From assembly GCA_977030845.1 (NCBI GenBank), contig OZ365117.1, positions 3,720,001 to 3,784,000 on the forward strand: DNA of 64,000 nt, written 5' to 3'. The notes beneath the pieces were generated by a model. It did not search any database. It was not told the DNA's origin and saw nothing but the letters and a program-made list of their open reading frames with translations. Below are positions 27,404-41,805 of this stretch, in pieces. Positions within the stretch are counted from its first letter, which is position 1. Each line of letters starts with the position of its first letter. The stretch comes from Fimbriosthenelais zetlandica. Its lineage: Eukaryota. Position numbers and translations under genes: made by a program.

Positions 27404-27830
27404 AGCCAATATTGATTTGTTGATTTTGATTTTTCAGGTATGGGGTTGAAGTGTTACACCTGAAATCTCCAAAACATTTTTATTGATACAAATTCTCATA
27501 ACAAGAATGGTACTTAATTGTTTGTCTTCTGACTCAAGTTGATAACTGTAATATGTACGATTGCCAATGAACTCTCCTTACAATGAGAGCCGATATTGAT
27601 TTGTTGATTTTGATTTTTCAGGTATGGGGTTGAAGTGTTACACCTGAAATCTCCAAAACATTTTTATTGATACAAATTCTCATAACAAGAATGGTACTTA
27701 ATTGTTTGTCTTCTGACTCAAGTTGATAACTGTAATATGTACGATTGCCAATGAACTCTCCTTACAATGAGAGCCGAAATTGATTTGTTGATTTTGATTT
27801 TTCAGGTATGGGGTTGAAGTGTTACACCTG
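27404..27830 (+). repeat. 184-bp tandem repeat spanning the intron/exon-2 boundary (three acceptor copies)
   Basis: TTTTCAG|GTATGGGGTTGAAGTGTTACACCTG with the AG at 27436, 27620 and 27804. A degenerate related segment lies at about 27126-27230. Confidence 0.95.
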
Positions 27831-27943
27831 TACGTCTGACACTAATGAGGAGTGTAGTCGTGAGGAGGACGTCACTGACTGTGATCTCAGCAGCACACCA
27901 ACAACGAAGTATGACACATGTCAGACAAAACTAACCAAATCAC
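27806..27943 (+). CDS. Ly6/uPAR three-finger protein, LYPD1-like, exon 2
   Basis: Acceptor ttttcag| and donor |gtgagt, both phase 1. Encodes GMGLKCYTCTSDTNEECSREEDVTDCDLSSTPTTKYDTCQTKLTKS, with the LxCYxC start of an LU domain. Confidence 0.9.
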
Positions 27944-27971
27944 GTGAGTACCTCCACTCTATAATCAGACG

Positions 27972-28235
27972 ATACCCCCATTGCATAATTTCTTATCTTA
28001 TCTTATCTTTAAGATCTTATCTTAAAGGTCTCGTCCCCAATTGGATTTGCATTGGCTACGAGACCTTTAATATAATGTAAGATCTTAAAGATAACATAAG
28101 ATCGTAACTTATACAATGCCCCAATACCCCCATTGCATAATTTCTTATCTTATCTTATCTTAAAGGTCTCGTCCCCATTGGATTTGCATTGGCTACGAGA
28201 CCTTTAGATCGTAACTTATGCAATGGCCCCAATAC
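27972..28235. repeat. Tandem pair (period 152 bp) of a MITE-like unit containing a nested 46-47 bp inverted repeat
   Basis: atacccccattgcataa... starts at 27972 and 28124. Nested TAAAGGTCTCGT..ACGAGACCTTTA at 28023-28069 and 28161-28206. Confidence 0.75.
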
Positions 28236-28903
28236 TTCAGTCTGTTCACTCTCAGTTGATCAGAAACCACCATACATTTGCACTGTGGTTTCGGATCAAC
28301 TGAGAGTGAACAGACTGTATCAAGTATATATATGGGCTGGCCTTGCTATCTGGGAATTAAGCCAGTCACAGGGAATATTTGAATGTTTTTATGTGTTGTG
28401 GTCGGGATACAAGATGCTGACCAGAGACTGGATGCCATCATCCCAATCAGTTTGGGACAGCCTCAACTTCAGATCTGTTCAGACCTAAAGCCTGACCACA
28501 ACCCTAATGGCAAGCCCAACCGCTTGGTGGCCAAAATTAGTATTTTTCCTCCATTTTGATCTTTCAAAGTTCTTAATATGGCTTGTAACATGTCGATCAA
28601 CATGAGTGCTGAGCAAAGCATAGTTTTTAAACAATTATTTCAGGCATTTTCAGTAGAAATTCATATATATGTTGTTGAACGATGATTAATTCATTGACAA
28701 ACTATACATTGCAGATCGTAAGTTGCCCCATAAAGCAAAGTAACAATATTCATTCCTTTGTGTTTTTTTTCATTCATAGATCTACGAAATCCAAATAATC
28801 CAAACTATTTCATAGTTTCCTTTTCGGTAGATTATTGGTGCCTTTCTTTCTATATCTGATTTTAAATTTGTTTATCTACATAGCTACATTCTGACCTGTT
28901 TAA

Positions 28904-29114
28904 AGCCGGGACTCCACTGCTGCGATTTTGTTTACGACACGTCTGCGACAAAGGTGATGCGTGTGTTTCAATGATAAATTTACCATTGGAGGACGGCCTT
29001 AAGGCCTTGGACACTTGAACCACAATTTATAAATTTTATTCTTACACAACTACACAAGCATCACCTTTGTCGCAGTAGTGTCGCAAGCAAAATCGCAGCA
29101 GTGGAGTCCCGGCT
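28904..29114. mobile_element. MITE family A, copy 3 (211 bp), in intron of the Ly6 gene
   Basis: Same TIRs and internal sequence as copies 1 and 2. Confidence 0.9.
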
Positions 29115-29416
29115 TTAGTAGTAGCTTCTGATTGATGCAATAGGAAGTAAATACCTATTACAATCACAGCCTTTCAGACTATATTAGACTAATTCTAATA
29201 TCTAATTCCAATATCTATTTTTTTACATTTGGTGAATTTGTTTCATTGTCAAAATTTAGGTTTCCGATTGACAAGTAGGAATGTATAATGTCAGTATTCT
29301 AATACAAGAAGAAGTCGCAGATTTAAGAAATGAATTTCTTGAAAATTAAAACCCAAACAAAGAAACAATACAGTGAGAATAAGATTAAGCAAGAGTGGCA
29401 TCTGGCCATCAAGATG

Positions 29417-29574
29417 CAACCCGTGAGGCTATTCCTATTGTTACATGTACTACCTTATACTTGATGTGCAGATTGCAGTATTGTAATCTTTATCAACCCG
29501 TGAGGCCATTCCTATTGTTACATGTACTACCTTATACTTGATGTGCAGATTGCAGTATTGTAATCTTTATCAAC
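29417..29574. repeat. 77-bp tandem duplication
   Basis: caacccgtgaggc(t/c)attcc...gtaatctttat at 29417 and 29494. Confidence 0.95.
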
Positions 29575-29656
29575 ATGTTCCATCACCATAATGGCTTGCT
29601 TGGCTAAGGTTTTGCTGTATCTTTTTTTAATAAGATGTTTTTGTTTTTTTTTACAG

Positions 29657-29916
29657 CTGAGCAAGGGGTGAAGATCATTAAGAAGTGCACCGTGGGACCG
29701 TGTGTGCTAGCCACCACCCAGAATCACGCCCTGGGCCTGTACTGTGACAGGTCCGGGCCCACCTGGGACTGTGAAGAGTGCTGCAACACTGACCGATGCA
29801 ACATCAGCTCTGCACCTGCCCTGCATCAATTGTCACAGACAACATGGCCGCTTCTACTGTGCGCCGCCATCTTGGCAGCCATGTTGCTTCAGCGGCGGCA
29901 TCAGTTTCTACTATAA
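29657..29916 (+). CDS. Ly6/uPAR three-finger protein, LYPD1-like, last coding exon with GPI signal
   Basis: Acceptor tttttacag| in phase 1, in frame with exon 2. PEQGVKIIKKCTVGPCVLATTQNHALGLYCDRSGPTWDCEECCNTDRCN ends in the CCxxxxCN signature, then the hydrophobic tail WPLLLCAAILAAMLL. 12 Cys in total. Confidence 0.92.
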
Positions 29917-30670: not shown

Positions 30671-32581
30671 GATCTCTGGGGCTCCAGGAATGGATTTCTT
30701 TTAAGGCGGAGGTCTCATCTGAGCTAGACAAACTATCAATGAGGGTGTTCTCATTCTGAAAATATTTATTTCATCAAGAAAAGCACGGTCATGGTCCGCA
30801 TGCGCTATAGTCAACGAAAAGTAACAAATATATTCATACCGAGTGTAACGATCTTAGAGTCCCATATCTTTATTGTAATGTAGGTTTTTGTTGTCTAGAT
30901 AAGAAAATCTTCATATGCTTCACATTACAACGATTTATTTCAGATTAAAATGGGGCAGAAAATTAATATTCTGCTTAACGTGTACATTCTACAGGGTTTT
31001 ACATTGTCTTTATACTGTGACAAACATTACTAATACGTTACTAAACCATTGTTTGAAGAGCAAGTATCGTACGTGGTGTAGACGTCTATGTGATACGGAC
31101 GTGGGTATTACGTAATAGATGTTAATAGTCCATGTTGTTACGAATATTTAATATTTAATATATGCACTGAGTGAGCTAGTTGTTTTCACACTGATGTAGT
31201 GCAGACCATATATGATATAGAGGCCTTGTGACATGTAAAATATGTGACTTGTTGAATGGTTCACTGAGGGTTGGTGGGGACAGCAGTTAACATCACGGGT
31301 TTCGGTGTAAAGATCGCATATCATTCCGAGAAGCCGTGACAATGCTAGGTGAAGTCACCCAGTCTCCACTTTACCTAAGATGGGGTTAGTTCTTGACATA
31401 CGCAACGGTTGTACTGCTCCGTAAGGACTAACAACAAGCCGTGTTCTCCTAAGAGGTACCATTAGAAACAACCCCAGAGAAACAAGAGAAGAAAAAATAT
31501 TTAAAAAAATCACACAATGAAAAAAATTGTGGAGATTTCAATGATTATTCCACCACAAACCCTGCATTTATTGTTTGTATTGGTCGGCATTTTGCACTCT
31601 TTTACCTTGATATGGCACGTCAGATTTCATCTAATCATTGTCAATGGCTTGGATGTAATATAATATTATTCAGAGTTTCCTCAGTGTCTAGCATATGGCC
31701 CTATGTACCTGTACATGTACTCGCATTGGTTAGGGCATATATTTATTATACTAAGATGTTAGTTGACCATGAGCAAAAAAAAAGTTAAAAATCAAAGAAA
31801 AAATATTATCATTATGTGCTCGAGTTGGTTTATCAGCGTCAATTGTGACAGACAACATGGCCGCTCCCACTGAGCGCCGCCATCTTGATTGTTACGGTTT
31901 GATTACTATTTTATGCTCTCCATAGTAAATGTGGTGATGGTGAGAGAAGGTGTATAGAGATAACGCTGAGGTGTTTAAATTAACACAAGAAGCTGCTTAA
32001 TTCAACCTGCTTCTTAACAGTTGCTTTAGTCTTGATGTTAACAGTGTTAATGGATTAACTCCCTACATGTTGTATATTCATCCTTGCTAGGAGTTGTCTG
32101 TGATCCTTTGGTGACAAAATAAAGACCGCTGGTTGAACTTTAAATTATTTTTCCAAATGTGGACCGCCAAATGTTCAGGGAGGTCCGTGGAATTGGAAAA
32201 AGATGTTTCCATTCAGAATAAAGACCACTGGTTGCCTAAAATATGTATGTTTTGGAATCTTTCCCTGATTATTGAAACAGATAAAAAAATGACTTAATGC
32301 CTTTAAATATGATTGAATTTATTTTAGTAGGGGAGCAGATATGAAAAAATGTAAAATTTCATGACTCCCCTTACGCAAAAAAAGTCTCGCCACTTTTCAG
32401 TAGTAGGGGACCAAATTCTATTTGGTAAAGTGAAATTTCTTCGGCCTTCCCCAAATTTTAAATCATTAAATCGTCCATAACTTTTTTCAAAATCCGGTCC
32501 ACCGAGATTACCAACAAAAACAACTTAAAACAATTTAAATATATTTTTATTTTTTAATCAGTTTAGATTTCTGCTTCATTT

Positions 32582-32649
32582 TCACTTTCGTCCCTGGCCA
32601 TTCTCCGTCGGCACCTTCCAGGTGAGGCGGTGATGCCCCGCTCTCTCAG
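32582..32649 (-). pseudogene. Terminal exon paralogous to array exon 36600-36625 (SERAGHHRLTWKVPTENGQGRK*)
   Basis: Acceptor ttcctttccatcag|CTGAGA shared with 36625. The 3' flank 32400-32560 is homologous to 35960-36120. The phase-1 frame ends TEN..RK* in both. Confidence 0.5.
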
Positions 32650-32763
32650 CTGATGGAAAGGAAACAAGGAATAAGTAAAGAACATCCATCACCCCAACAT
32701 ATCCTAGTACCGGGTGCTAAAAACATGGCTTTTATGGTCACGCCAGAGCATAATTTGGCTCAC

Positions 32764-33040
32764 CGTCTGGTGCTGCCAGCTGTTATCTCTTAATGGAAAC
32801 TAACGGCAGAAGAGGTATGTTAATGTTTAAAATTCCAGGTGGCATCACAATATCAGGCAGCTGTCATCGATCTAAAGACAATAATAAATCATCTCTACTC
32901 ATAACCACAGTGGAATCAGAAGGAATAAATGGATAAACTCACCTGTCAGTCTTTTTTCTGATTAATAAATCCAGTAAAAGCGAGCATTTTAGGTCCAACT
33001 GATCAAGCGATCCCAGCTTTAGCGTGGTTGTGTTGTTAGG
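32764..33040 (-). ncRNA. Predicted spliced non-coding exons (about 33040-32943 and 32871-32764) feeding the 32649 terminal exon
   Basis: Donors cag|GTGAGT (32942) and acg|GTGAGC (32763), acceptor ttgtctttag| (32872). The middle exon has stops in all frames. Confidence 0.4.
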
Positions 33041-33653: not shown

Positions 33654-33960
33654 TGTGATCTATTTCAGATAACTTTCATGGCATTTTCTGCTTTATATTG
33701 ATTGTATGTGATCTATTTCAGATAACTTTCATGGCATTTAATGCCTTTATATTGATGTATATGATCTATTTCAGATAACTTTCATGGCATTTAATGCCTT
33801 TATATTGATATATGTGATCTATTTCAGATAACTTTCATGGCATTTAATGCCTTTATATTGATTGTTTGTGATCTATTTCAGATAACTTTCATGGCATTTA
33901 ATGCCTTTATATTGATTGTATGTGATCTATGTCAGGTAACTTTCATGGCATTTTATGCCT
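33654..33960. repeat. About 53-bp minisatellite, about 6 copies
   Basis: Unit tgtgatctatttcagataactttcatggcatttaatgcctttatattgattgta. Confidence 0.95.
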
Positions 33961-34766
33961 GTATGTGATTGTGGCATAAAGACGTGTGTATGAGGGAGTA
34001 GATTGTGGATCTATCATGTTTGGACTATTTGAGATATTTCGTATATTATATGGATGTATACGGTGTGTGTCATATTGCCTCTGTGTAGGTGTAGATGTTA
34101 TAACAATATTGCCGGTCCTTTTGAAAGCTCATGTGTTGTGAAACCTTGCAACTGTTGAGAGGTCTATCGATATGTCCTGTCCATTCTTGGGCCTGCTAGG
34201 TCTAATTCATATAGGCCTAGGCCTAATCTGATGACGGGCAGTGGACTCAATGTCATACTTTCTTGTATAGGCCTAGTAGGCCTATATGCTTTGCATTAGG
34301 CTAGGCTATATTCATCTGCCTTGTCTCTTCTCTACTGGTTTCCACTGTTCAGCCCCTCCCCTTGCGTTTTTGGATCAGTGGTCTGTGCCATTCTCATTCA
34401 TCATCTGTAGGCCTATCTGTAGCCTAGGCCTGCTTCTGGTATTCAAATAACATCAGCCTATTGATTTTGAGTTTAAAATGTTTTATTTGAACAGTTCGGC
34501 TGGTGGCTGGTCTTGCACATGTAGCCTACAATTCAGGCTGTTTGTTTTAGAATTATTACAAAAATACAATGCATTTCAATACAAACAAAACAATAATTAG
34601 ACTATATTTGTAGGTCTACATTGGAGTGGGTTTGCTGGCTCGTCCCCTCAGCCTATGGGTTCTAACCACTGCTTGCAATTCAAAAAGACCATTAGCCTAT
34701 AGGCCTAGGCCTTATCCAAGGTCTCATGTCTCTTCCTGGTTTCCATTGTTCAGCTCCACCCCCCTT

Positions 34767-35362
34767 GGGAGTATAGTCTTCCCAAAGTAAGTTGAGCCAT
34801 ACCACCATAGGAAATGTACTGTTTCTATGGTGGTTTCGGCTCAACTTAGTTTGGACACACTGTAGCATACAGTCTAATGGAGCGATGGCCATGGTGCTGC
34901 AAAGCTAAGGAACAACATGTTCCTTCTTAGCGTCAATCCTCTTCCAAGTACAGAAGAGCTGTACTTCACTACAGCACTCTCCATAATGTTCTTCTATATA
35001 ATACATATAGGCCTACCTGTTGTCGTTTTGTCCCCGACGGTTAAATTCATTCTCCACCGCCTCTTTGGATTTTGTGGTCCATTGTTTTTTTTTTGTATTT
35101 TCTTTTTATCTTATTTTGGCGATGCATTGTTTCTATAGTACATATCGGGCTCGGATTGTCCACTTGGGGAGTATAGTCTTCCCAAAGTAAGTTGAGCCAT
35201 ACCACCATAGGAAATGTACTGTTTCTATGGTGGTTTCGGCTCAACTTAGTTTGGACACACTGTAGCATACAGTCTAATGGAGCGATGCCCATGGTGCTGC
35301 AAAGCTAAGGAACAACATTTTCCTTCTTAGCGTCGGGTCAATCCTCTTCCAAGTACAGAAGA
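34767..35362. repeat. About 195-bp direct duplication 400 bp apart, each copy containing a long hairpin
   Basis: gggagtatagtcttcccaaagtaagttgagcc... at 34767 and 35167. Confidence 0.95.
35017..35292 (-). pseudogene. Chimeric ORF: duplicated hairpin-containing segment fused in frame to an M-type variable exon, frameshifted at the A tract
   Basis: MGIAPLDC...YTPQVD-NPSPICTIETMHRQNKIKRKYKKK. A tract is 10 rather than 11 nt. Donor CAACAG|gtaggc at 35016. Confidence 0.5.
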
Positions 35363-36162
35363 GGTGTTGTCGCTTCCTTGGCGTTTTTTAATGATATTTT
35401 CGACTTTTAGGGCTGACCACTGCTTGATGATTCGAGTGTTAATATAATTACCAAGTTGCCTATAAATGTTGTAATCCAAAATACCTTAGATTAGATTAAC
35501 CTGTAATTCACAGTTGGACATATAGATATACATGACTGATGTCTGCAGTGTCCAAATAGATTTCCCTGACAATTGCAGAGGGTTCACTGACACTGTGACA
35601 CAGCTAACATTAACTCTATTAAAAAGCAAATGTGGTTTTAGTAACTTGTCCAGGATACAATAATAACTATTGAGGAATTGCCCAGGCAGGATTTAATGCC
35701 ATGTCATTCTATTCCTTCATTTTATTCTCTTCCACATGGTTTCTACATAATGATGTCAACAATGATGTCCTCATCATCCAGGGTGGCTGTTGCCACTTCC
35801 TCCCTCTGAAGATCTACCCCTCTATGCGCGTCCGTTAGCTTTAGCCGCCATGATTATATTGATTATATTGTTAAACACTTGTTAAACGAGTTCATTATAA
35901 GAAGTTTGGTCTAGGCTTCTGATGAAGATTCCAGTTCCTACCCCACATTTTAAATTCTAAAATCATTAATTCTTCGCAAAATGAATTTTCTTCGGCCTTC
36001 CCCAGATTGTAAATTATAAAATCTTCCATAACTTTGTCAAAATACGGTCCATCGAGAGTAACCAAGAAAACAACATTTCATATTTTAAATATCCGGTATT
36101 TTATTAATTTTTAATCAAATATCTCAATGACGTCGACCGGCCCCACCTGGTGGAAGAAAACC

Positions 36163-36612
36163 CCTATTGTCGGGGTGTCTCGCCCTATTGTCGGGGTGTC
36201 TCGCCCTATTGTCGGGGGCACTCGCCCTATTGTCGGGGTGTCTCGCCCTATTGTCGGGGTCTCTCGCCTTATTGTCGGGGCACTCGCCCTATTGTCGGGG
36301 TGTCTCGCCCTATTTTCGGGGTCTCTCGCCTTATTGTCGGGGCACTCGCCCTATTGTCGGGGTGTCTCGCCCTATTTTCGGGGGCTCTCGCCTTATTTTC
36401 GGGGCACTCGCCCTATTGTCGGGGTCTCTCGCCTTATTGTCGGGGCACTCGCCCTATTGTCGGGGGCACTCGCCTTATTGTCGGGGCACTCGCCCTATTG
36501 TCGGGGTGTCTCGCCCTATTGTCGGGGGTGTCTCGCCCTATTGTCGGGGTCTCTAGCCTTATTGTCGGGGCACTCGCCCTATTGTCGGGGTGTCTCGCCC
36601 TATTTTCGGGGG
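36163..36612. repeat. 19-20 bp GC-rich minisatellite, over 20 copies
   Basis: Unit cgccctattgtcgggg(tgtct/cact/tctct). Accounts for the stop-free ORFs in all three plus frames. Confidence 0.97.
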
Positions 36613-36625
36613 TTCTCGGTCTCAG
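36600..36625 (-). CDS. Array gene: predicted terminal constant exon E4 (S-ETENPRK*)
   Basis: Acceptor tttcttttcttccatcag| in phase 1. TAG at 36602-36600. Confidence 0.5.
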
Positions 36626-36693
36626 CTGATGGAAGAAAAGAAATATCCTAGTAAACATCGTAGTGAACATTACTTAAACCACTCTTAACTCAC

Positions 36694-36762
36694 ATAATAA
36701 AGGCCCGGGATAACGGCTGTAGCCTATAACGGCAGTACCGGCATATGGCGCGCTTATTTTTG
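36694..36762 (-). CDS. Array gene: predicted constant exon E3 (A-KISAPYAGTAVIGYSRYPGPLL)
   Basis: Acceptor gcttgcttttcataag|, donor |GTGAGT, 69 nt, phase 1 to 1, open frame. Confidence 0.5.
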
Positions 36763-36817
36763 CTTATGAAAAGCAAGCGGCATATGAATTCCTCAGTATA
36801 TATATATATAGGCCTAC

Positions 36818-36981
36818 CTCGAGTTGTCTTCTCCCCTTGTGGCTCTGTCCGAGTTGTGTACTCGACCCTTAAATTCACTTGCCAACGGGCAATTGTCGGC
36901 ATTTGTGTGTTTTCCTGCGATGTAAAATCGATCTGAATTTTTTTTTGTCTCTGCATTGTGTTGATGAGACAACCCGGATTC
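36818..36981 (-). CDS. Array gene: N-type variable exon N1, uncharacterised domain
   Basis: ttttcag| ... |gtaggc, 164 nt, phase 2 to 1. NPGCLINTMQRQKKIQIDFTSQENTQMPTIARWQVNLRVEYTTRTEPQGEKTTR. Confidence 0.7.
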
Positions 36982-37190
36982 CTGAAAAAAAAGTACTTCC
37001 ACATTAATATACATATAATATATATAATATATATAAAATTCTGATGTTGCGTGTGTATAGTCCCTTGTAGACAAGTTGCCCTCGAGATAGCTTTTCTGTC
37101 TTAGGATTTGTGGCACAAACAGCTAACTCCACCATGAAATTTAAAATTTGTCATACATAATGTTCTTCTATATAATACATATAGGCCTAC

Positions 37191-37327
37191 CTGTTGTTTT
37201 TTTGTCCCCGACGGTCAAATACATCGACCACCGCCTCTTTGGATTTTGTGGTCCATGGTTTTTTTTTTTGTATTTTCTTTTTATCTTATTTTGCCGATGC
37301 ATGGTTTCGATAGTACATATCGGGCTC
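37191..37327 (-). CDS. Array gene: M-type variable exon, intact
   Basis: ttttttcag| ... |gtaggc, 137 nt, phase 2 to 1. SPICTIETMHRQNKIKRKYKKKNHGPQNPKRRWSMYLTVGDKKTT. Confidence 0.6.
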
Positions 37328-37425
37328 CTGAAAAAATTAATTGCAAAAACAATCAGGAATCGATATGATCTTGAATTCATTAAAACTTTACCGTGCGAAA
37401 AATAAAGTCAAATATATATACTTAC

Positions 37426-37439
37426 GGGTTTCCTGCCAT
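37426..37439 (-). CDS. Array gene: ATG exon (MAGNP)
   Basis: AAAATGGCAGGAAACCC|GTAAGT, phase 2. Confidence 0.55.
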
Positions 37440-37699
37440 TTTAGTCTTTAGTGTAGAGGGGCTGTGTTCTGACCTAGGCTACTATACAAATGAGGCGTCT
37501 TTTCATAGTGTGTTTACACGTTGAAACCATGGACAAGCTCGTCTCATAATAATAACTTGTTACTCTTCCTCAAACTACGTGTTCGATTGCAAAACCAGTT
37601 ATAATTAGCAGTTCTCTTTGTACTAAAGTTTTGAAATCATCAAATTACGGAAGGCTTGCTTTGATAGTGATTGTTTGGAATCTAAGCCCCTTTGTCATC

Positions 37700-37730
37700 A
37701 GATTGGTTCCAGATTAAAACAAGGGCGGAT
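37700..37730 (-). promoter_or_regulatory. GC box plus CCAAT box repeated upstream of each ATG exon
   Basis: ATTGG/GGGCGG on the plus strand at 37702/37723 and 39514/39535; variants at 40803 and 41408/41455. Confidence 0.4.
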
Positions 37731-37795
37731 TTAGTAGAAGGAAATTTAAAATTTGTCATACATAATGTTCTTCTATATAATACATATAGGCCTAC

Positions 37796-37931
37796 CTGTT
37801 GTCGTTTTGTCCCCGACTCTTAAAGTTGTCGTCCACCTCCTCTTGGGATTTTGTGGTCCATTTTTTTTTTTTATTATTTTCTTTTTATCTTCTTTTGGCG
37901 ATGCATCGTTTCTATAGTACATATCGGGCTC
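37796..37931 (-). pseudogene. M-type exon, disabled
   Basis: 136 nt, in-frame TAA TAA plus a frameshift in the A tract; splice sites retained. Confidence 0.6.
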
Positions 37932-38202
37932 CTGAATATACAATTATATTTAAATGACTGATGCCTGCAGTGTCCAAATAGATTTCCACCTCCTCTTGGG
38001 ATGTTGTGGTCCATTGTTTTTTTTTTATTTTCTTTTTATCTTCTTTTGGCGGTACAGCGTTTCAATCGTGCATATCAGGCTCGGATTGATGACCCAGTGC
38101 CTGTACAAATTGGAAGTTGAAAGATTTTCAATAAGACATAATGGACGAGGCATTCTGCAATGGAACATTTTGCAGTGTTTTGGGTTCATTTTGTTGACAA
38201 TT

Positions 38203-38433
38203 ACTAAATGTGGTCAAGCAAGATGCCTTGCATGTATATCATAGAAGACCAATCAATTAATTTCCATGAAGCTAATTACAACTTCAAAGTACAATCAGCA
38301 CTTAACTGTAACTCAAGCAATGTACTATATGTCCTAATTTGCCAAGGTTTTAAAAAATATTACATTGGTAAGACTAAAACTGCTTTGAGATTTAGACTAA
38401 ACAACCACAGATCTCACGTAAACAACCCAAAAA
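38203..38433 (+). mobile_element. Penelope-like element GIY-YIG endonuclease fragment (frameshifted copy)
   Basis: ALNCNSSNVLYVLICQGFKKYYIGKTKTALRFRLNNHRSH carries the VLY..YIG and RxRxxxH motifs. 1-bp deletion relative to 39865-40095. Confidence 0.85.
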
Positions 38434-38631
38434 TGCTATTCTTTGTAGTCGCCATTTTGTGATATATATGTATACGGTACATTATATACAGAAATATTAA
38501 GTACAATTCTGAGTGAAGTGAGATATATCAAAAAATGAAAGGCAAAAATGTACTTTTCATTATTCAATGTGGAAGTAATTTCTTGCTTTTAAGCTTTGTC
38601 ATCACACCAGTATATATATATATAGGCCTAC

Positions 38632-38795
38632 CCCGAGTTGTCTTTTCGCCATGTGGCTCTGTCCTAGTCCTGTAATGGACAGTCAAATTTACTTGCCAAC
38701 GGGCAATTGTCGGCATTTGTGTGTTTTCCTGCGATGTAAAATCGATCTGAATTTTTTTTTGTCTCTGCATTCTGTTGATGAGACAACCCGGATTC
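38632..38795 (-). CDS. Array gene: N-type variable exon N2
   Basis: 164 nt, phase 2 to 1, open. NPGCLINRMQRQKKIQIDF...NLTVHYRTRTEPHGEKTTR. Confidence 0.65.
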
Positions 38796-39004
38796 CTGAA
38801 AAAAAAGTACTTCCACATTAATATACATATAATATATATAATATATATAAAATTCTGATGTTGCGTGTGTATAGTCCCTTGTAGACAAGTTGCCCTCGAG
38901 ATAGCTTTTCTGTCTTAGGATTTGTGGCACAAACAGCTAACTCCACCATGAAATTTAAAATTTGTCATACATAATGTTCTTCTATATAATACATATAGGC
39001 CTAC

Positions 39005-39139
39005 CTGTTGTTTTTTTGTCCCCGACGGTCAAATACATCGACCACCGCCTCTTTGGATTTTGTGATCCATGGTTTTTTTTTGTATTTTCTTTTTATCTTA
39101 TTTTGCCGATGCATGGTTTCGATAGTACATATCGGGCTC
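39005..39139 (-). pseudogene. M-type exon, frameshifted (A tract 9 instead of 11)
   Basis: 135 nt. ATG exon at 39238-39251 intact. Could be a homopolymer sequencing error. Confidence 0.5.
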
Positions 39140-39237
39140 CTGAAAAAATTAATTGCAAAAACAATCAGGAATCGATATGATCTTGAATTCATTAAAACTT
39201 TACCGTGCGAAAAATAAAGTCAAATATATATACTTAC

Positions 39238-39251
39238 GGGTTTCCTGCCAT
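39238..39251 (-). CDS. Array gene: ATG exon (MAGNP)
   Basis: AAAATGGCAGGAAACCC|GTAAGT, phase 2. Confidence 0.5.
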
Positions 39252-39607
39252 TTTAGTCTTTAGTGTAGAGGGGCTGTGTTCTGACCTAGGCTACTATACA
39301 AATGAGGCGTCTTTTCATAGTGTGTTTACACGTTGAAACCATGGACAAGCTCGTCTCATAATAATAACTTGTTACTCTTCCTCAAACTACGTGTTCGATT
39401 GCAAAACCAGTTATAATTAGCAGTTCTCTTTGTACTAAAGTTTTGAAATCATCAAATTACTGAAGGCTTGCTTTGATAGTGATTGTTTGGAATCTAAGCC
39501 CCTTTGTCATCAGATTGGTTCCAGATTAAAACAAGGGCGGATTTAGTAGAAGGAAATTTAAAATTTGTCATACATAATGTTCTTCTATATAATACATATA
39601 GGCCTAC

Positions 39608-39762
39608 CTGTTGTCGTTTTGTCCCCGACTCTTAAAGTTGTCGTCCACCTCCTCTTGGGATTTTGTGGTCCATTTTTTTTTTTTTATTATTTTCTTTTTA
39701 TCTTCTTTTGGCGGTACAGCGTTTCAATCGTGCATATCGGGCTCGGATTGATGACCCAGTGC
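39608..39762 (-). pseudogene. Extended M-type exon with in-frame stops
   Basis: tttgtacag|, 155 nt, phase 2 to 1. HWVINPSPICTIETLYRQKKIKRK**KKKNGPQNPKRRWTTTLRVGDKTTT. Confidence 0.6.
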
Positions 39763-39864
39763 CTGTACAAATTGGAAGTTGAAAGATTTTCAATAAGACA
39801 TAATGGACGAGGCATTCTGCAATGGAACATTTTGCAGTGTTTTGGGTTCATTTTGTTGACAATT

Positions 39865-40095
39865 ACTAAATGTGGTCAAGCAAGATGCCCTTGCATGTAT
39901 ATCATAGAAGACCAATCAATTAATTTCCATGAAGCTAATTACAACTTCAAAGTACAATCAGCACTTAACTGTAACTCAAGCAATGTACTATATGTCCTAA
40001 TTTGCCAAGGTTTCAAAAAATATTACATTGGTAAGACTAAAACTGCTTTGAGATTTAGACTAAACAACCACAGATCTCACGTAAACAACCCAAAA
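39865..40095 (+). mobile_element. Penelope-like element GIY-YIG endonuclease fragment
   Basis: TKCGQARCPCMYII...ALNCNSSNVLYVLICQGFKKYYIGKTKTALRFRLNNHRSHVNNP: Cys-rich linker followed by the GIY-YIG motif. Confidence 0.88.
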
Positions 40096-40300
40096 ATGCT
40101 ATTCTTTGTAGTCGCCATTTTGTGATATATATGTATAAGGTACATTATATACAGAAATATTAAGTAGAATTCTGAGTGAAGTGAGATATATCAAAAAATG
40201 AAAGGCAAAAATGTACTTTTCATTATTCAATGTGGAAGTAATTTCTTGCTTTTAAGCTTTGTCATCACACCAGTATATATATATATATATATAGGCCTAC

Positions 40301-40464
40301 CTCGAGTTGTTTTTTCCCCTTGGGGCTCTGTCCGTGTCCGGTAATGTACCGTCAAATTCACTTGCCAACGGGCAATTGTTGGCATTTGTGCGTTCTCTTT
40401 TGATGAAAAATCGATTTCAATTTTTTTTTGTCTCTGCATGGTATTTATGAGACATCCCGGATTT
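40301..40464 (-). CDS. Array gene: N-type variable exon N3
   Basis: tttttttcag| ... |gtaggc, 164 nt, open. NPGCLINTMQRQKKIEIDFSSKENAQMPTIARWQVNLTVHYRTRTEPQGEKTTR. Confidence 0.72.
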
Positions 40465-40558
40465 CTGAAAAAAAATTAATTGCAGAAACAATCAGGTATC
40501 TATATGATCGTGAATTCATTAAAACTTTTCGGTACGAAATAAAGTCAAATTTACTTAC

Positions 40559-40569
40559 TGCTGCGCCAT
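40559..40569 (-). CDS. Array gene: ATG exon (MAQQ)
   Basis: AGAATGGCGCAGCA|GTAAGT, phase 2, in frame with N3. Confidence 0.55.
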
Positions 40570-40896
40570 TCTTTACCTCTCCTCTCTGGTATACCAAGTA
40601 CAAATGAGAATTGTAACCATGGACAAGCTCGTCTCATGATAATAACTTGTTACTCTTCCTCAAACTACGTGTTCGATTGCAAAACCAGTTATAATTAGCA
40701 GTTCTCTTTGTACTAAAGTTTTGAAATCATCAAATTACGGAAGGCTTGCTTTGATAGTGATTGTTTGGAATCTAAGCCCCTTTGTCATCAGCTTGGTTCC
40801 GGATTGGTTCCAGATTAAAACAAGCGCGGATTTAGTAGAAGGAAATTTAAAATTTGTCATACATAATGTTCTTCTATATAATATATATAGGCCTAC

Positions 40897-41033
40897 CTGT
40901 TGTTTTTTTGTCCCCGACGGTCAAATACATCGACCACCGCCTCTTTGGATTTTGTGGTCCATGGTTTTTTTTTTTGTATTTTCTTTTTATCTTATTTTGC
41001 CGATGCATGGTTTCGATAGTACATATCGGGCTC
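40897..41033 (-). CDS. Array gene: M-type variable exon, intact
   Basis: 137 nt, phase 2 to 1, same translation as 37191-37327. Confidence 0.6.
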
Positions 41034-41131
41034 CTGAAAAAATTAATTGCAAAAACAATCAGGAATCGATATGATCTTGAATTCATTAAAACTTTACCGT
41101 GCGAAAAATAAAGTCAAATATATATACTTAC

Positions 41132-41145
41132 GGGTTCCCTGCCAT
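41132..41145 (-). CDS. Array gene: ATG exon (MAGNP)
   Basis: AAAATGGCAGGGAACCC|GTAAGT, phase 2. Confidence 0.55.
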
Positions 41146-41639
41146 TTTACTGACTTCTTTACGGCTCTGTTCTTGTCTAGGCTACTGTACAAATGAGGCG
41201 TCTTTTCATAGTGTGTTTACACGTTGAAACCATGGACAAGCTCGTCTCATAATAATAATTTGTTACTCTTCCTCAAACTACGAGTTCGATTGTAAAACCA
41301 TTTATAATTAGCAGTTCTCCTTGTAATAAAGTTTTGAAATTATCAAATGACGTAAGGCTTGCTTTGATAGTGATTGTTTGGAATCTTTGTCATCAGCTTG
41401 GTTCCGGATTGGTTCCAGATAGGCTTCCACATTAAAACAAGCGCGGATTTAGTAGGGGGCGGTTTTATTTAGTACAGTCTTATAGAGAATATTACGAGCG
41501 TTATTATGATAATGTCACATGGAGATTTGGGAAAAACAATATTTCTTAAAAAAATTCAAAATATAAAAGCTTAAACCTATAGCTTCAATAACTTCAATAC
41601 CCTCTGGTATAGTGTCACCTGTCGTTTAGTATTGGTAAC

Positions 41640-41805
41640 CGCTGGAAAGCCCGCGATGCAACTCTTGGTTGTACCACCTCGTGTAGACAGCTGGGAGCCT
41701 CTCCTCACAGTGCCTTGTACGTGTGGAGAATGATCTTATACTCCACCCGCTGCTGTCCTGGTAGCCAGTTGAGTTCATCACAGGCATCATGTGATCATGG
41801 ACACC
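41640..41805 (-). mobile_element. L2/CR1-group LINE ORF2 3' fragment
   Basis: DHMMPVM(fs)LNWLPGQQRVEYKIILHTYKAL*GEAPSCL matches the HITPVL..LHWLPV..RI.YKI...YKAL.G.AP motif. Confidence 0.85.

What the first reader, a model, noticed from the sequence alone, without database searches (positions are those of the whole stretch)
36600..41470. Hidden minus-strand array of promoter/ATG/variable-exon cassettes upstream of one shared constant 3' end
Seen: four ATG mini-exons (41132-41145, 40559-40569, 39238-39251, 37426-37439) all end in phase 2 with GTAAGT and sit downstream of GC/CCAAT motifs. Eight homologous exons (M type 137 nt, N type 164 nt; five are open) all run phase 2 to phase 1 with ttttcag|...|gtaggc sites. 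Only one downstream phase-1 exon pair (36694-36762, 36600-36625) reaches a stop. Any one variable exon joins the constant pair in frame (81-90 aa products, e.g. MAQQNPGCLINTMQRQKKIEIDF...EKTTRAKISAPYAGTAVIGYSRYPGPLLSETENPRK), while two together shift the frame. Inference: a variable-cassette/constant-region layout like clustered protocadherins or UGT1A, producing isoforms of a small unknown protein. Alternative: only the proximal unit works and the rest are 3'-truncated tandem duplicates.
Basis: partly seen in the sequence, partly recalled or inferred. Interest (0 to 1): 0.85.

Follow-up and report, generated by a model that had tools for sequence, protein, structure and literature searches.

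The report
Tandem cassettes of an orphan small-protein gene
This stretch holds a real but unnamed small-protein gene repeated in tandem, whose coding exons have stayed distinct while the DNA around them was copied over, but the sequence alone cannot show that all copies share one common end piece.

Summary
On the minus strand there are four promoter-like blocks, each with an ATG mini-exon, and eight homologous M/N exons, five of them open. Any open one joins C1+C2 in frame.

New here: the exons are truly coding. N1 vs N2 gives dN 0.05 and dS 0.94, with 18 of 25 differences at third codon positions. The spacers beside the exons are 99.4-100% identical while the N exons differ by 8.5-16%. So old exons sit in recently homogenised flanks.

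The "constant" end is weaker than claimed:
- C2 is the first unit of a 21-nt minisatellite.
- A second copy of its acceptor lies beyond the satellite.
- A satellite-free paralogue of this 3' module lies 4 kb downstream.
- Another M exon lies beyond C1/C2.
- Three M-type copies carry stop plus AATAAA.

Unlike protocadherin/UGT1A first exons, these variable exons are internal exons with strong acceptors, so M and N behave more like frame-exclusive alternative exons.

No homologue was found, but the databases appear to lack this genome.

Verdict: a real taxon-restricted gene cluster. A shared 3' end is plausible (about 0.35-0.4) but unproven. An earlier scan note on this same stretch also reported purifying selection.

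The parts
41146..41455 (-). P1: promoter-like block plus 5'UTR (CCAAT 41408-41412, TATAAATGG 41298-41306)
   Evidence: P1-P4 alignment, 87% mean identity; motif coordinates
41132..41145 (-). ATG1 mini-exon (14 nt, phase 2, donor GTAAGT)
40897..41033 (-). M1 variable exon (137 nt, open, phase 2 to 1); identical to M5
40570..40838 (-). P2: promoter-like block
40559..40569 (-). ATG2 mini-exon (11 nt, phase 2)
40301..40464 (-). N1 variable exon (164 nt, open)
   Evidence: dN 0.053, dS 0.94 vs N2
39763..40300 (-). Spacer S, copy 1. Carries, on the + strand, a dead fragment of a Penelope-like element GIY-YIG nuclease (about 39865-40125)
   Evidence: (PF01541, E 0.0014); 0.6% divergent from copy 2
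39608..39762 (-). Mx2: M-type exon with its own acceptor, two in-frame TAA codons and an AATAAA at 39688
39252..39553 (-). P3: promoter-like block
39238..39251 (-). ATG3 mini-exon
39005..39139 (-). M3 exon (135 nt; A-run 2 nt shorter, so frame is lost; could be a homopolymer assembly error)
38632..38795 (-). N2 variable exon (164 nt, open; donor context GG|GT)
38089..38631 (-). Spacer S, copy 2, with the same Penelope-like fragment (+ strand, 38208-38462)
37985..38088 (-). Mtrunc: truncated M-type copy, with AATAAA at 38029. It is joined to a 43-nt piece that also occurs at 35523-35565
37796..37931 (-). Mx4: M-type exon (136 nt, stops, AATAAA at 37875)
37440..37741 (-). P4: promoter-like block
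37426..37439 (-). ATG4 mini-exon
37191..37327 (-). M5 variable exon (137 nt, open)
36818..36981 (-). N3 variable exon (164 nt, open). Its 5' 104 nt are near-identical to N2; its 3' 60 nt are an old, distinct lineage
36694..36762 (-). C1: candidate constant exon (69 nt, phase 1 to 1, weak acceptor cataag). No independent support
   Evidence: no second copy in the window
36600..36625 (-). C2: candidate terminal coding segment. Strong acceptor; its stop lies in the first minisatellite unit
36162..36618 (.). 21-nt minisatellite, about 22 copies
36124..36158 (-). Second copy of the terminal-exon acceptor (36147-36158), followed by 7 codons plus TGA in phase 1
35978..36117 (-). 3'UTR/downstream part of 3' module A, with AATAAA at 36100-36105
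35017..35162 (-). M6: ninth M-type copy, beyond the 'constant' exons. It has no promoter or ATG exon, its A-run shifts the frame, and it lies between two 200-nt hairpin repeats
32427..32659 (-). 3' module B: satellite-free paralogue of module A. Its acceptor matches that of C2; the exon 32582-32649 is open in phase 1 for 22 codons; AATAAA at 32546-32551
36987..37005 (-). U arm over the N3 acceptor tract (same sequence at 38801-38819 before N2). It is complementary to D arms at 38566-38584 and 40229-40247, which lie 47 nt downstream of the N2 and N1 donors
   Evidence: lead only

Best explanation
The region is a taxon-restricted cluster for a small, lysine/arginine-rich protein with no detectable relatives. 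It is built from tandem cassettes on the minus strand. Each cassette has a promoter-like block, a first exon ending in an 11-14-nt ATG segment, and one or two homologous coding exons (M, 137 nt; N, 164 nt). M and N share phase 2 to 1, so exactly one of them can be used per mRNA.

Shown: The non-coding parts of the cassettes have been homogenised very recently by duplication or gene conversion, while the N exons kept old differences.

Inferred: only one terminal-exon/3'UTR module (A, satellite-disrupted) follows the cassettes directly, and a cleaner paralogue (B) lies 4 kb further. So transcripts started at upstream cassettes most likely splice their chosen M or N exon to this shared downstream 3' end, skipping the intervening exons. 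This is a variable/constant layout that needs mutually-exclusive-exon-type skipping, not the simple first-exon rule of protocadherin/UGT1A.

The protein's role is unknown. Its basic KIKRKYKKK-like tract and the lack of a signal peptide suggest a nuclear or nucleic-acid-binding peptide. That is weak inference.
For: Coordinates, phases and in-frame joins were reproduced.

Coding signal:
- N1 vs N2: differences by codon position are 6/1/18, dN 0.053, dS 0.94. The other five frames have stops or dS near 0. Binomial P = 9e-5.
- M1 vs Mx2, first half: 2/0/7, dN 0.077, dS 1.16.
- M and N are homologous at protein level (33-38% identity, in-window tblastn E 1e-5).

Exons are older than their flanks:
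- N1/N2: exon 26/164 differences vs spacer S 3/531 (Fisher P = 2e-14).
- N2/N3: exon 14/164 vs 0/209 in the M-N spacer immediately upstream of the exon (2/676 over all compared non-coding blocks).
- The three N 3' parts are mutually about 20% diverged in a star-like way.

The 3' end:
- Module A shares its acceptor and 141 nt (79%) of 3' sequence with AATAAA with module B, so it is a genuine repeated terminal-exon module.
- No canonical poly(A) signal follows M1 or N1-N3 themselves.

The 12-nt GTAGGCCTATAT after every M and N exon is invariant despite saturated synonymous divergence just upstream. That fits a constrained splice donor rather than read-through coding.

A -21.9 kcal/mol complementarity links the tract over the N2/N3 acceptors with a site 47 nt after the N1/N2 donors. 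Such pairing could mask downstream acceptors.
Against: - No RNA evidence of any kind could be obtained.
- The variable exons have strong acceptors of their own, so skipping up to six of them is demanding.
- C1 is single-copy, has a weak acceptor, and its openness has roughly a 0.2-0.3 chance probability (my own rough estimate, not computed).
- C2's stop lies inside a minisatellite, and a duplicated acceptor follows the satellite.
- An M copy (M6) lies beyond module A, so A sits inside the array, not after it.
- The flanks are so young that intact upstream exons do not prove present function.
- M3, Mx4 and M6 are out of frame and Mx2 carries stops.
- The RNA pairing beats shuffled controls only modestly (best shuffled -17.5 +/- 2.1, minimum -23.0), and its four occurrences are copies of one event.
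Confidence: 0.38

Rival explanations
1. Only the proximal gene works: P4, ATG4, then M5 or N3 as frame-exclusive alternative exons, then the 3' module A. The upstream units are recent 3'-truncated partial duplicates that are not yet degraded.
For: - The proximal unit is compact and complete, with introns of 98, 209, 55 and 68 nt.
- Units b and c are 97.8% identical over 1139 nt, and non-coding parts differ by 0-0.3%, so the present arrangement is very young.
- M3, Mx4 and Mx2 are already disabled.
- The edges of the young tracts can be explained without selection: one is mid-exon in N2/N3, the other at a (TA)n run after N1/N2.
Against: - Three mutually old N lineages (dS 0.26-0.94) are all intact, and each has been kept under purifying selection.
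- A plain recent duplication would have copied the exon along with its flanks.
- All four ATG exons and their GTAAGT donors are intact.
Confidence: 0.27
2. The region is a tandem array of separate small genes, each with its own end. The Mx copies that follow N1 and N2 serve as terminal exons, because an in-frame TAA and an AATAAA coincide in their A-rich tract. Only the last unit uses module A.
For: - AATAAA lies on the minus strand inside Mx2 (39688), Mtrunc (38029) and Mx4 (37875), but not in M1, M3, M5 or M6.
- In phase 2 Mx2 ends with ...KIKRK then stop. In phase 1 after N1 it gives 21 codons and a stop 12 nt before AATAAA.
- The 1.8-kb period then looks like a macrosatellite of whole genes.
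Against: - The Mx first half carries its purifying-selection signal in the M frame (phase 2), not in the phase-1 frame needed after an N exon.
- AATAAA arises easily in an A-run.
- Unit 1 (P1-ATG1-M1) has no such terminator before P2.
- Mtrunc is a truncated copy joined to unrelated DNA.
Confidence: 0.15
3. The array is no longer functional. It is either a decaying pseudogene cluster or an assembly artefact of a repeated region. The coding signal would then reflect past function, or ectopic conversion from working paralogues elsewhere in the genome.
For: - No homologue or called gene was found in any database.
- The terminal exon of module A is disrupted by a minisatellite.
- Several copies are broken.
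- Transposon fragments lie in the spacers.
- Exon-limited divergence could come from conversion by distant paralogues that share only the exon.
Against: - Five exons, four ATG exons and all donors are intact.
- Ectopic conversion across only 164 nt at about 85% identity is inefficient (established knowledge, not tested here).
- The database blanks are uninformative, because the neighbouring Ly6/uPAR-like ORF also finds nothing.
Confidence: 0.1

Closest known systems
Multiple-variable-first-exon clusters (clustered protocadherins, UGT1A, GCNT2; PMC1885805)
   Same: A tandem array of homologous variable coding units. Several have their own promoter-like block. All are in frame with one downstream 3' module. 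The units evolve by duplication and conversion.
   Different: - There the variable exon is the first exon and has no acceptor. Here the variable coding exon is the second exon, with a strong acceptor behind an 11-14-nt ATG mini-exon.
- Half of the variable exons here lack a promoter of their own.
- The candidate constant part is tiny (8-31 codons) and satellite-disrupted.
- There are two candidate 3' modules.
- Splicing is untested.
Mutually exclusive exon clusters made by tandem exon duplication, with competing RNA structures in some cases (PMC5740500, PMC6071210)
   Same: M and N are homologous neighbours with the same phase. Their lengths are not multiples of three, so using both shifts the frame into a stop. 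A complementary pair of intronic arms flanks or bridges the N exons.
   Different: M and N differ in length by 27 nt. The cluster is interleaved with promoters and ATG exons. The RNA pairing has no covariation support and only modest statistical support.
Tandem paralogues whose introns are homogenised by gene conversion while exons stay distinct (primate L/M opsins, PMC3213168)
   Same: Exon divergence greatly exceeds divergence in the adjacent non-coding DNA. The differences in the exons are mostly synonymous, that is, old.
   Different: In opsins, selection on known tuning residues explains the pattern. Here the function is unknown. The tract edges can also be explained by a (TA)n run and a mid-exon breakpoint, and no population or cross-species data were available.
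Macrosatellite-type tandem gene arrays under concerted evolution (recalled from memory, not tested)
   Same: A 1.7-1.8-kb period, 95-100% identity of non-coding parts, and each unit carries an ORF-bearing cassette.
   Different: The units are mosaic and incomplete, and the exons are much less similar than the rest of the unit.

Membership tests
Variable-first-exon / constant-region cluster (protocadherin, UGT1A type) | Tandem array of homologous variable exons upstream of a shared set of constant exons, all phase-compatible | tested here: met
   Five open variable exons join C1+C2 in frame; C2 alone, or module B, is also in phase
Variable-first-exon / constant-region cluster (protocadherin, UGT1A type) | Each variable exon has its own promoter | tested here: inconclusive
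   Four conserved blocks with CCAAT, GC and TATAA motifs precede ATG1-4. N2, N3, Mx2 and Mx4 have none of their own. Promoter activity cannot be tested here
Variable-first-exon / constant-region cluster (protocadherin, UGT1A type) | Variable exons are first exons without a 3' splice acceptor, so downstream ones cannot be spliced in | tested here: not met
   M and N exons follow ttttcag acceptors and lie behind a separate ATG mini-exon
Variable-first-exon / constant-region cluster (protocadherin, UGT1A type) | mRNAs join one variable exon to the constant exons | not testable with these tools
   No transcript data. Exact-product look-ups and protein searches were blank
Mutually exclusive exons from tandem exon duplication | Adjacent homologous exons with the same phase | tested here: met
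   M vs N: 33-38% identity, E 1e-5. Both run phase 2 to 1
Mutually exclusive exons from tandem exon duplication | Joint inclusion is prevented, by frame shift/NMD or by competing RNA structure | tested here: inconclusive
   Joint inclusion shifts the frame into a stop. The U/D arm pairing is -21.9 kcal/mol, against a mean best-shuffled value of -17.5 +/- 2.1 (minimum -23.0). N2 with flanks folds at z = -4.8. There is no covariation
Tandem gene array under concerted evolution | Repeat units nearly identical within the array | tested here: met
   Non-coding blocks differ by 0-0.6%; M1 and M5 plus their introns are identical
Tandem gene array under concerted evolution | Each unit is a complete gene with its own 3' end | tested here: inconclusive
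   AATAAA plus stop occur in the Mx copies after N1 and N2. None follows M1, and the frame signal argues against N>Mx reading
Penelope-like retroelement | RT plus GIY-YIG ORF with pLTRs/hammerhead motifs | tested here: not met
   Only about 90 aa of linker plus half a GIY-YIG domain is present, on the opposite strand. No hammerhead was found in Rfam scans

The most novel reading that the evidence does not exclude
The locus is a hybrid diversification system. Alternative promoters choose a cassette. Frame-exclusive M/N exons give a second choice. Long-range pairing between the arm downstream of an N donor and the arm over the next N acceptor masks the downstream acceptors, so the chosen exon reaches a shared 3' module. 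Selection keeps the cassette exons distinct against ongoing gene conversion. The result would be a family of isoforms of an orphan basic peptide.
Probability: 0.15. Interest if true: 0.6.

Novelty: new member of a known kind. Interest (0 to 1): 0.36.

Why it matters
If the upstream cassettes really reach a shared 3' end, this would be a compact invertebrate example of variable/constant gene logic. It would be built from two-exon cassettes that need exon skipping, linking the alternative-promoter and mutually-exclusive-exon routes to isoform diversity.

Even without that, the locus gives three things:
- A clean case of old, selected exons embedded in freshly homogenised flanks.
- An unannotated, taxon-restricted small-protein gene.
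- A reminder that an in-frame "constant" exon found by eye can be a minisatellite edge.

Tried and rejected
1. A plus-strand gene. The 186-aa ORF at 39565-40125 is only a dead Penelope-like GIY-YIG fragment fused to antisense exon sequence. All antisense frames of the N exons have stops.

2. The cassettes as pseudo-LTRs of a Penelope-like element, with hammerhead ribozymes (CTGATGA is present in the P blocks). Rfam found nothing at gathering or E<=10 thresholds.

3. A dispersed repeat or transposon. blastn and tblastn against the whole window find copies only within 34.7-41.5 kb.

4. Homologues of the N and M peptides. Word search of 5.8 billion proteins, phmmer on 1.84 billion representatives, Pfam, and the ESM Atlas (N only) were all blank. 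Two exact-ORF look-ups were blank. The control ORF of the neighbouring Ly6/uPAR-like gene was also blank, so these negatives are weak.

5. Read-through ends (stop in GTAGGCCTATAT...). Judged unlikely: these 12 nt show no synonymous change, the frame would run through a (TA)n microsatellite, and no poly(A) signal follows.

6. A codon-level match between C2 and the end of module B ("TEN..RK stop"). It was seen by eye but not reproduced by alignment, so it was dropped.

7. A stem between the first and last 11 nt of the N exon. It is good in N2 and N3 but has three uncompensated mismatches in N1, so it was not used.

Full report
**Setting.** The window is animal DNA with about 40% G+C. Its introns are of the GTAAGT...YAG type, and a Ly6/uPAR-like gene lies on the plus strand at 27.8-29.9 kb. 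Rfam finds nothing in the window.

**Anatomy.** Self-comparison shows that everything related to the finding lies between 34761 and 41455; no copy occurs elsewhere in the window. In gene (minus-strand) order the region reads:
- P1, ATG1, M1
- P2, ATG2, N1, spacer S, Mx2
- P3, ATG3, M3, a 209-nt spacer, N2, spacer S, a truncated M copy fused to Mx4
- P4, ATG4, M5, the 209-nt spacer, N3
- C1, C2 and a 21-nt minisatellite of about 22 units
- a duplicate acceptor and a 3'UTR-like stretch with AATAAA
- about 0.8 kb of unique DNA
- M6, set between two 200-nt hairpin repeats

This order rests.

Three details do not hold. M3 and Mx4 have A-runs that are 2 nt and 1 nt shorter, so they lose the frame. 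Mx2 has a different acceptor and two in-frame TAA codons. Two further M copies exist outside the eight that were listed. Because the A-run is a homopolymer of 9-13 bases, these frame differences could also be assembly errors.

**The exons are coding.** N1 and N2 differ at 26 of 164 positions. This gives dN 0.053 and dS 0.94. The other two sense frames give dS of 0-0.1, and all three antisense frames contain stops. The binomial P for the third-position excess is 9e-5.

The first 17 codons of the M exons show the same signal: M1 vs Mx2 is 2/0/7 by codon position, with dN 0.077 and dS 1.16. The second half of M is relaxed, at 3/4/5. M and N are homologous to each other at 33-38% identity. This agrees with the scan's other note on this stretch (s1-207693). 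So the observation describes real coding sequence, not chance ORFs.

**Old exons in young flanks.** The 538-nt spacer S after N1 and N2 differs at 3 of 531 aligned bases, while the exons themselves differ by 16%. Between units b and c, the 209-nt spacer, the intron, the promoter block and the ATG exon differ at 0-1 positions, while N2 and N3 differ at 14 (Fisher P of 2e-14 and 6e-9).

The N2/N3 differences are clustered: 13 of the 14 lie in the last 60 nt. In that part the three N exons are mutually about 20% diverged in a star-like way, mostly at synonymous sites. So at least three old N lineages exist. The DNA around them has been overwritten recently by duplication or gene conversion. One tract edge lies mid-exon and another lies at the (TA)n run just after the donor.

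The same contrast, exons more diverged than introns, is described for primate L/M opsins. There it is ascribed to conversion plus selection against homogenising the exons (PMC3213168). Here that reading is attractive but not proven. Because the flanks are so young, intact upstream exons do not by themselves show present function.

**The 3' end.** C2 has a strong acceptor, but it overlaps the first unit of the minisatellite, and its TAG stop belongs to the repeat. A near-copy of the acceptor follows the satellite at 36147. In phase 1 it gives 7 codons plus TGA, 18 nt before AATAAA.

A satellite-free paralogue of this module lies at 32427-32659. It has the same ...ccatcag|CTGAGA junction, a 22-codon phase-1 ORF, an AATAAA, and 141 nt at 79% identity to the stretch after the satellite. 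This supports C2 and its 3' region as a genuine terminal-exon module of a small family. It also shows that copy A has been remodelled and that there are two candidate shared ends.

C1 is single-copy and has a weak acceptor (cataag). It is a 69-nt in-frame cassette, so it is optional for the frame, and nothing supports it independently.

Canonical poly(A) signals on the minus strand within the array occur only inside Mx2, Mtrunc and Mx4, where they coincide with the in-frame TAA, and after the satellite.

**Comparison with the proposed analogues.** In protocadherin and UGT1A clusters each variable exon is a first exon with its own promoter and no acceptor (PMC1885805, and established knowledge). 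Here the variable coding exons are second exons with good acceptors, and four of the eight have no promoter block of their own. A transcript from P1 would therefore have to skip up to six competent acceptors. That is the behaviour of mutually exclusive exon clusters (PMC5740500, PMC6071210).

M and N do fit that class. They are homologous and have the same phase, and joint inclusion shifts the frame into a stop.

One lead on mechanism was found. A 19-nt tract covering the polypyrimidine tract of the N2 and N3 acceptors is complementary (17 of 19 bases; -21.9 kcal/mol with extension) to a tract 47 nt downstream of the N1 and N2 donors. This is the best partner in the whole array. Shuffled arms reach -17.5 +/- 2.1 as their best, with a minimum of -23.0. 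N2 with its flanks folds with z = -4.8 and closes on this stem. The four occurrences are copies of one event and there is no covariation, so this remains a lead only.

**Invariant donor motif.** The 12 nt GTAGGCCTATAT after every M and N exon are invariant, although synonymous sites just upstream are saturated. This fits a constrained donor or regulatory element better than read-through coding. The palindrome TAGGCCTA is, however, over-represented across the whole window: 22 occurrences against 0.67 expected, with 13 of them outside these donors.

**Relatives and mobile DNA.**
- No relative of the N or M peptide was found by word search, exhaustive phmmer, Pfam or, for N, the ESM Atlas.
- Exact-ORF look-ups were blank.
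- A control ORF from the neighbouring Ly6/uPAR-like gene was also blank. So the collections probably lack this genome and its kin, and "orphan" is provisional.
- Spacer S contains, on the opposite strand, a dead fragment of a Penelope-like element: linker plus half a GIY-YIG domain. No hammerhead or other RNA family is present.

**Verdict.** The locus is a real, unannotated, taxon-restricted small-protein gene cluster evolving by tandem duplication and conversion. My confidences for how it is expressed are:
- 0.38: upstream cassettes use a shared downstream 3' module.
- 0.27: only the proximal gene works, with M5 and N3 as alternative exons.
- 0.15: separate genes that end in the Mx exons.
- 0.10: a dead or mis-assembled array.

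Only transcript data can decide between these. The kind of system is known, the protein family is new, and the interest is moderate.

Noticed in passing
window 27808-29916 (+): ORFs with the CCxxDxCN hallmark and a hydrophobic tail look like exons of a Ly6/uPAR (three-finger) GPI-anchored protein gene on the plus strand. This was recognised by eye, and a word search found no relatives.
   Followed up: partly
window 39865-40125 and 38208-38462 (+): Two copies of a dead Penelope-like retroelement fragment (linker plus the first half of a GIY-YIG nuclease) sit inside the spacer that follows N1 and N2. They are antisense to the cassettes.
   Followed up: yes
whole window, e.g. 12326, 16962, 34212-34707, 42222, 43948, 44548, 45483, 53609: The palindrome TAGGCCTA occurs 22 times against 0.67 expected. 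Thirteen of these lie outside the cassette donors, with a cluster of six at 34.2-34.7 kb. This may be a genome-wide motif or a repeat terminus.
   Followed up: partly
window 34761-34962 and 35160-35367: Two 200-nt direct repeats (95-96% identical) each contain a long hairpin of about 27 bp arms. They bracket the stray M6 exon. They look MITE- or miRNA-precursor-like, but Rfam hits are weak only (MIR1862, mir-606).
   Followed up: partly
window 36162-36618: A 21-nt minisatellite of about 22 units appears to have grown out of the end of a terminal coding exon. Copies of that exon's acceptor flank it on both sides.
   Followed up: yes
window 33654-33972: A 53-nt tandem repeat, 6 copies, 93% matches. 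Function unknown.
   Followed up: no
window 41640-41800 (-): Just upstream of the array, one frame reads ...NWLPGQQRVEYKIILHTYKAL(stop)GEAPSCL... From memory this resembles a motif common in retrotransposon-derived repeats of animals. It is probably a transposon fragment bounding the array.
   Followed up: no
window 32770-33000 (-): Possible short exons with GTGAG donors lie just upstream of the second 3' module (B). That module may therefore belong to a further, unrecognised gene rather than to the array.
   Followed up: no
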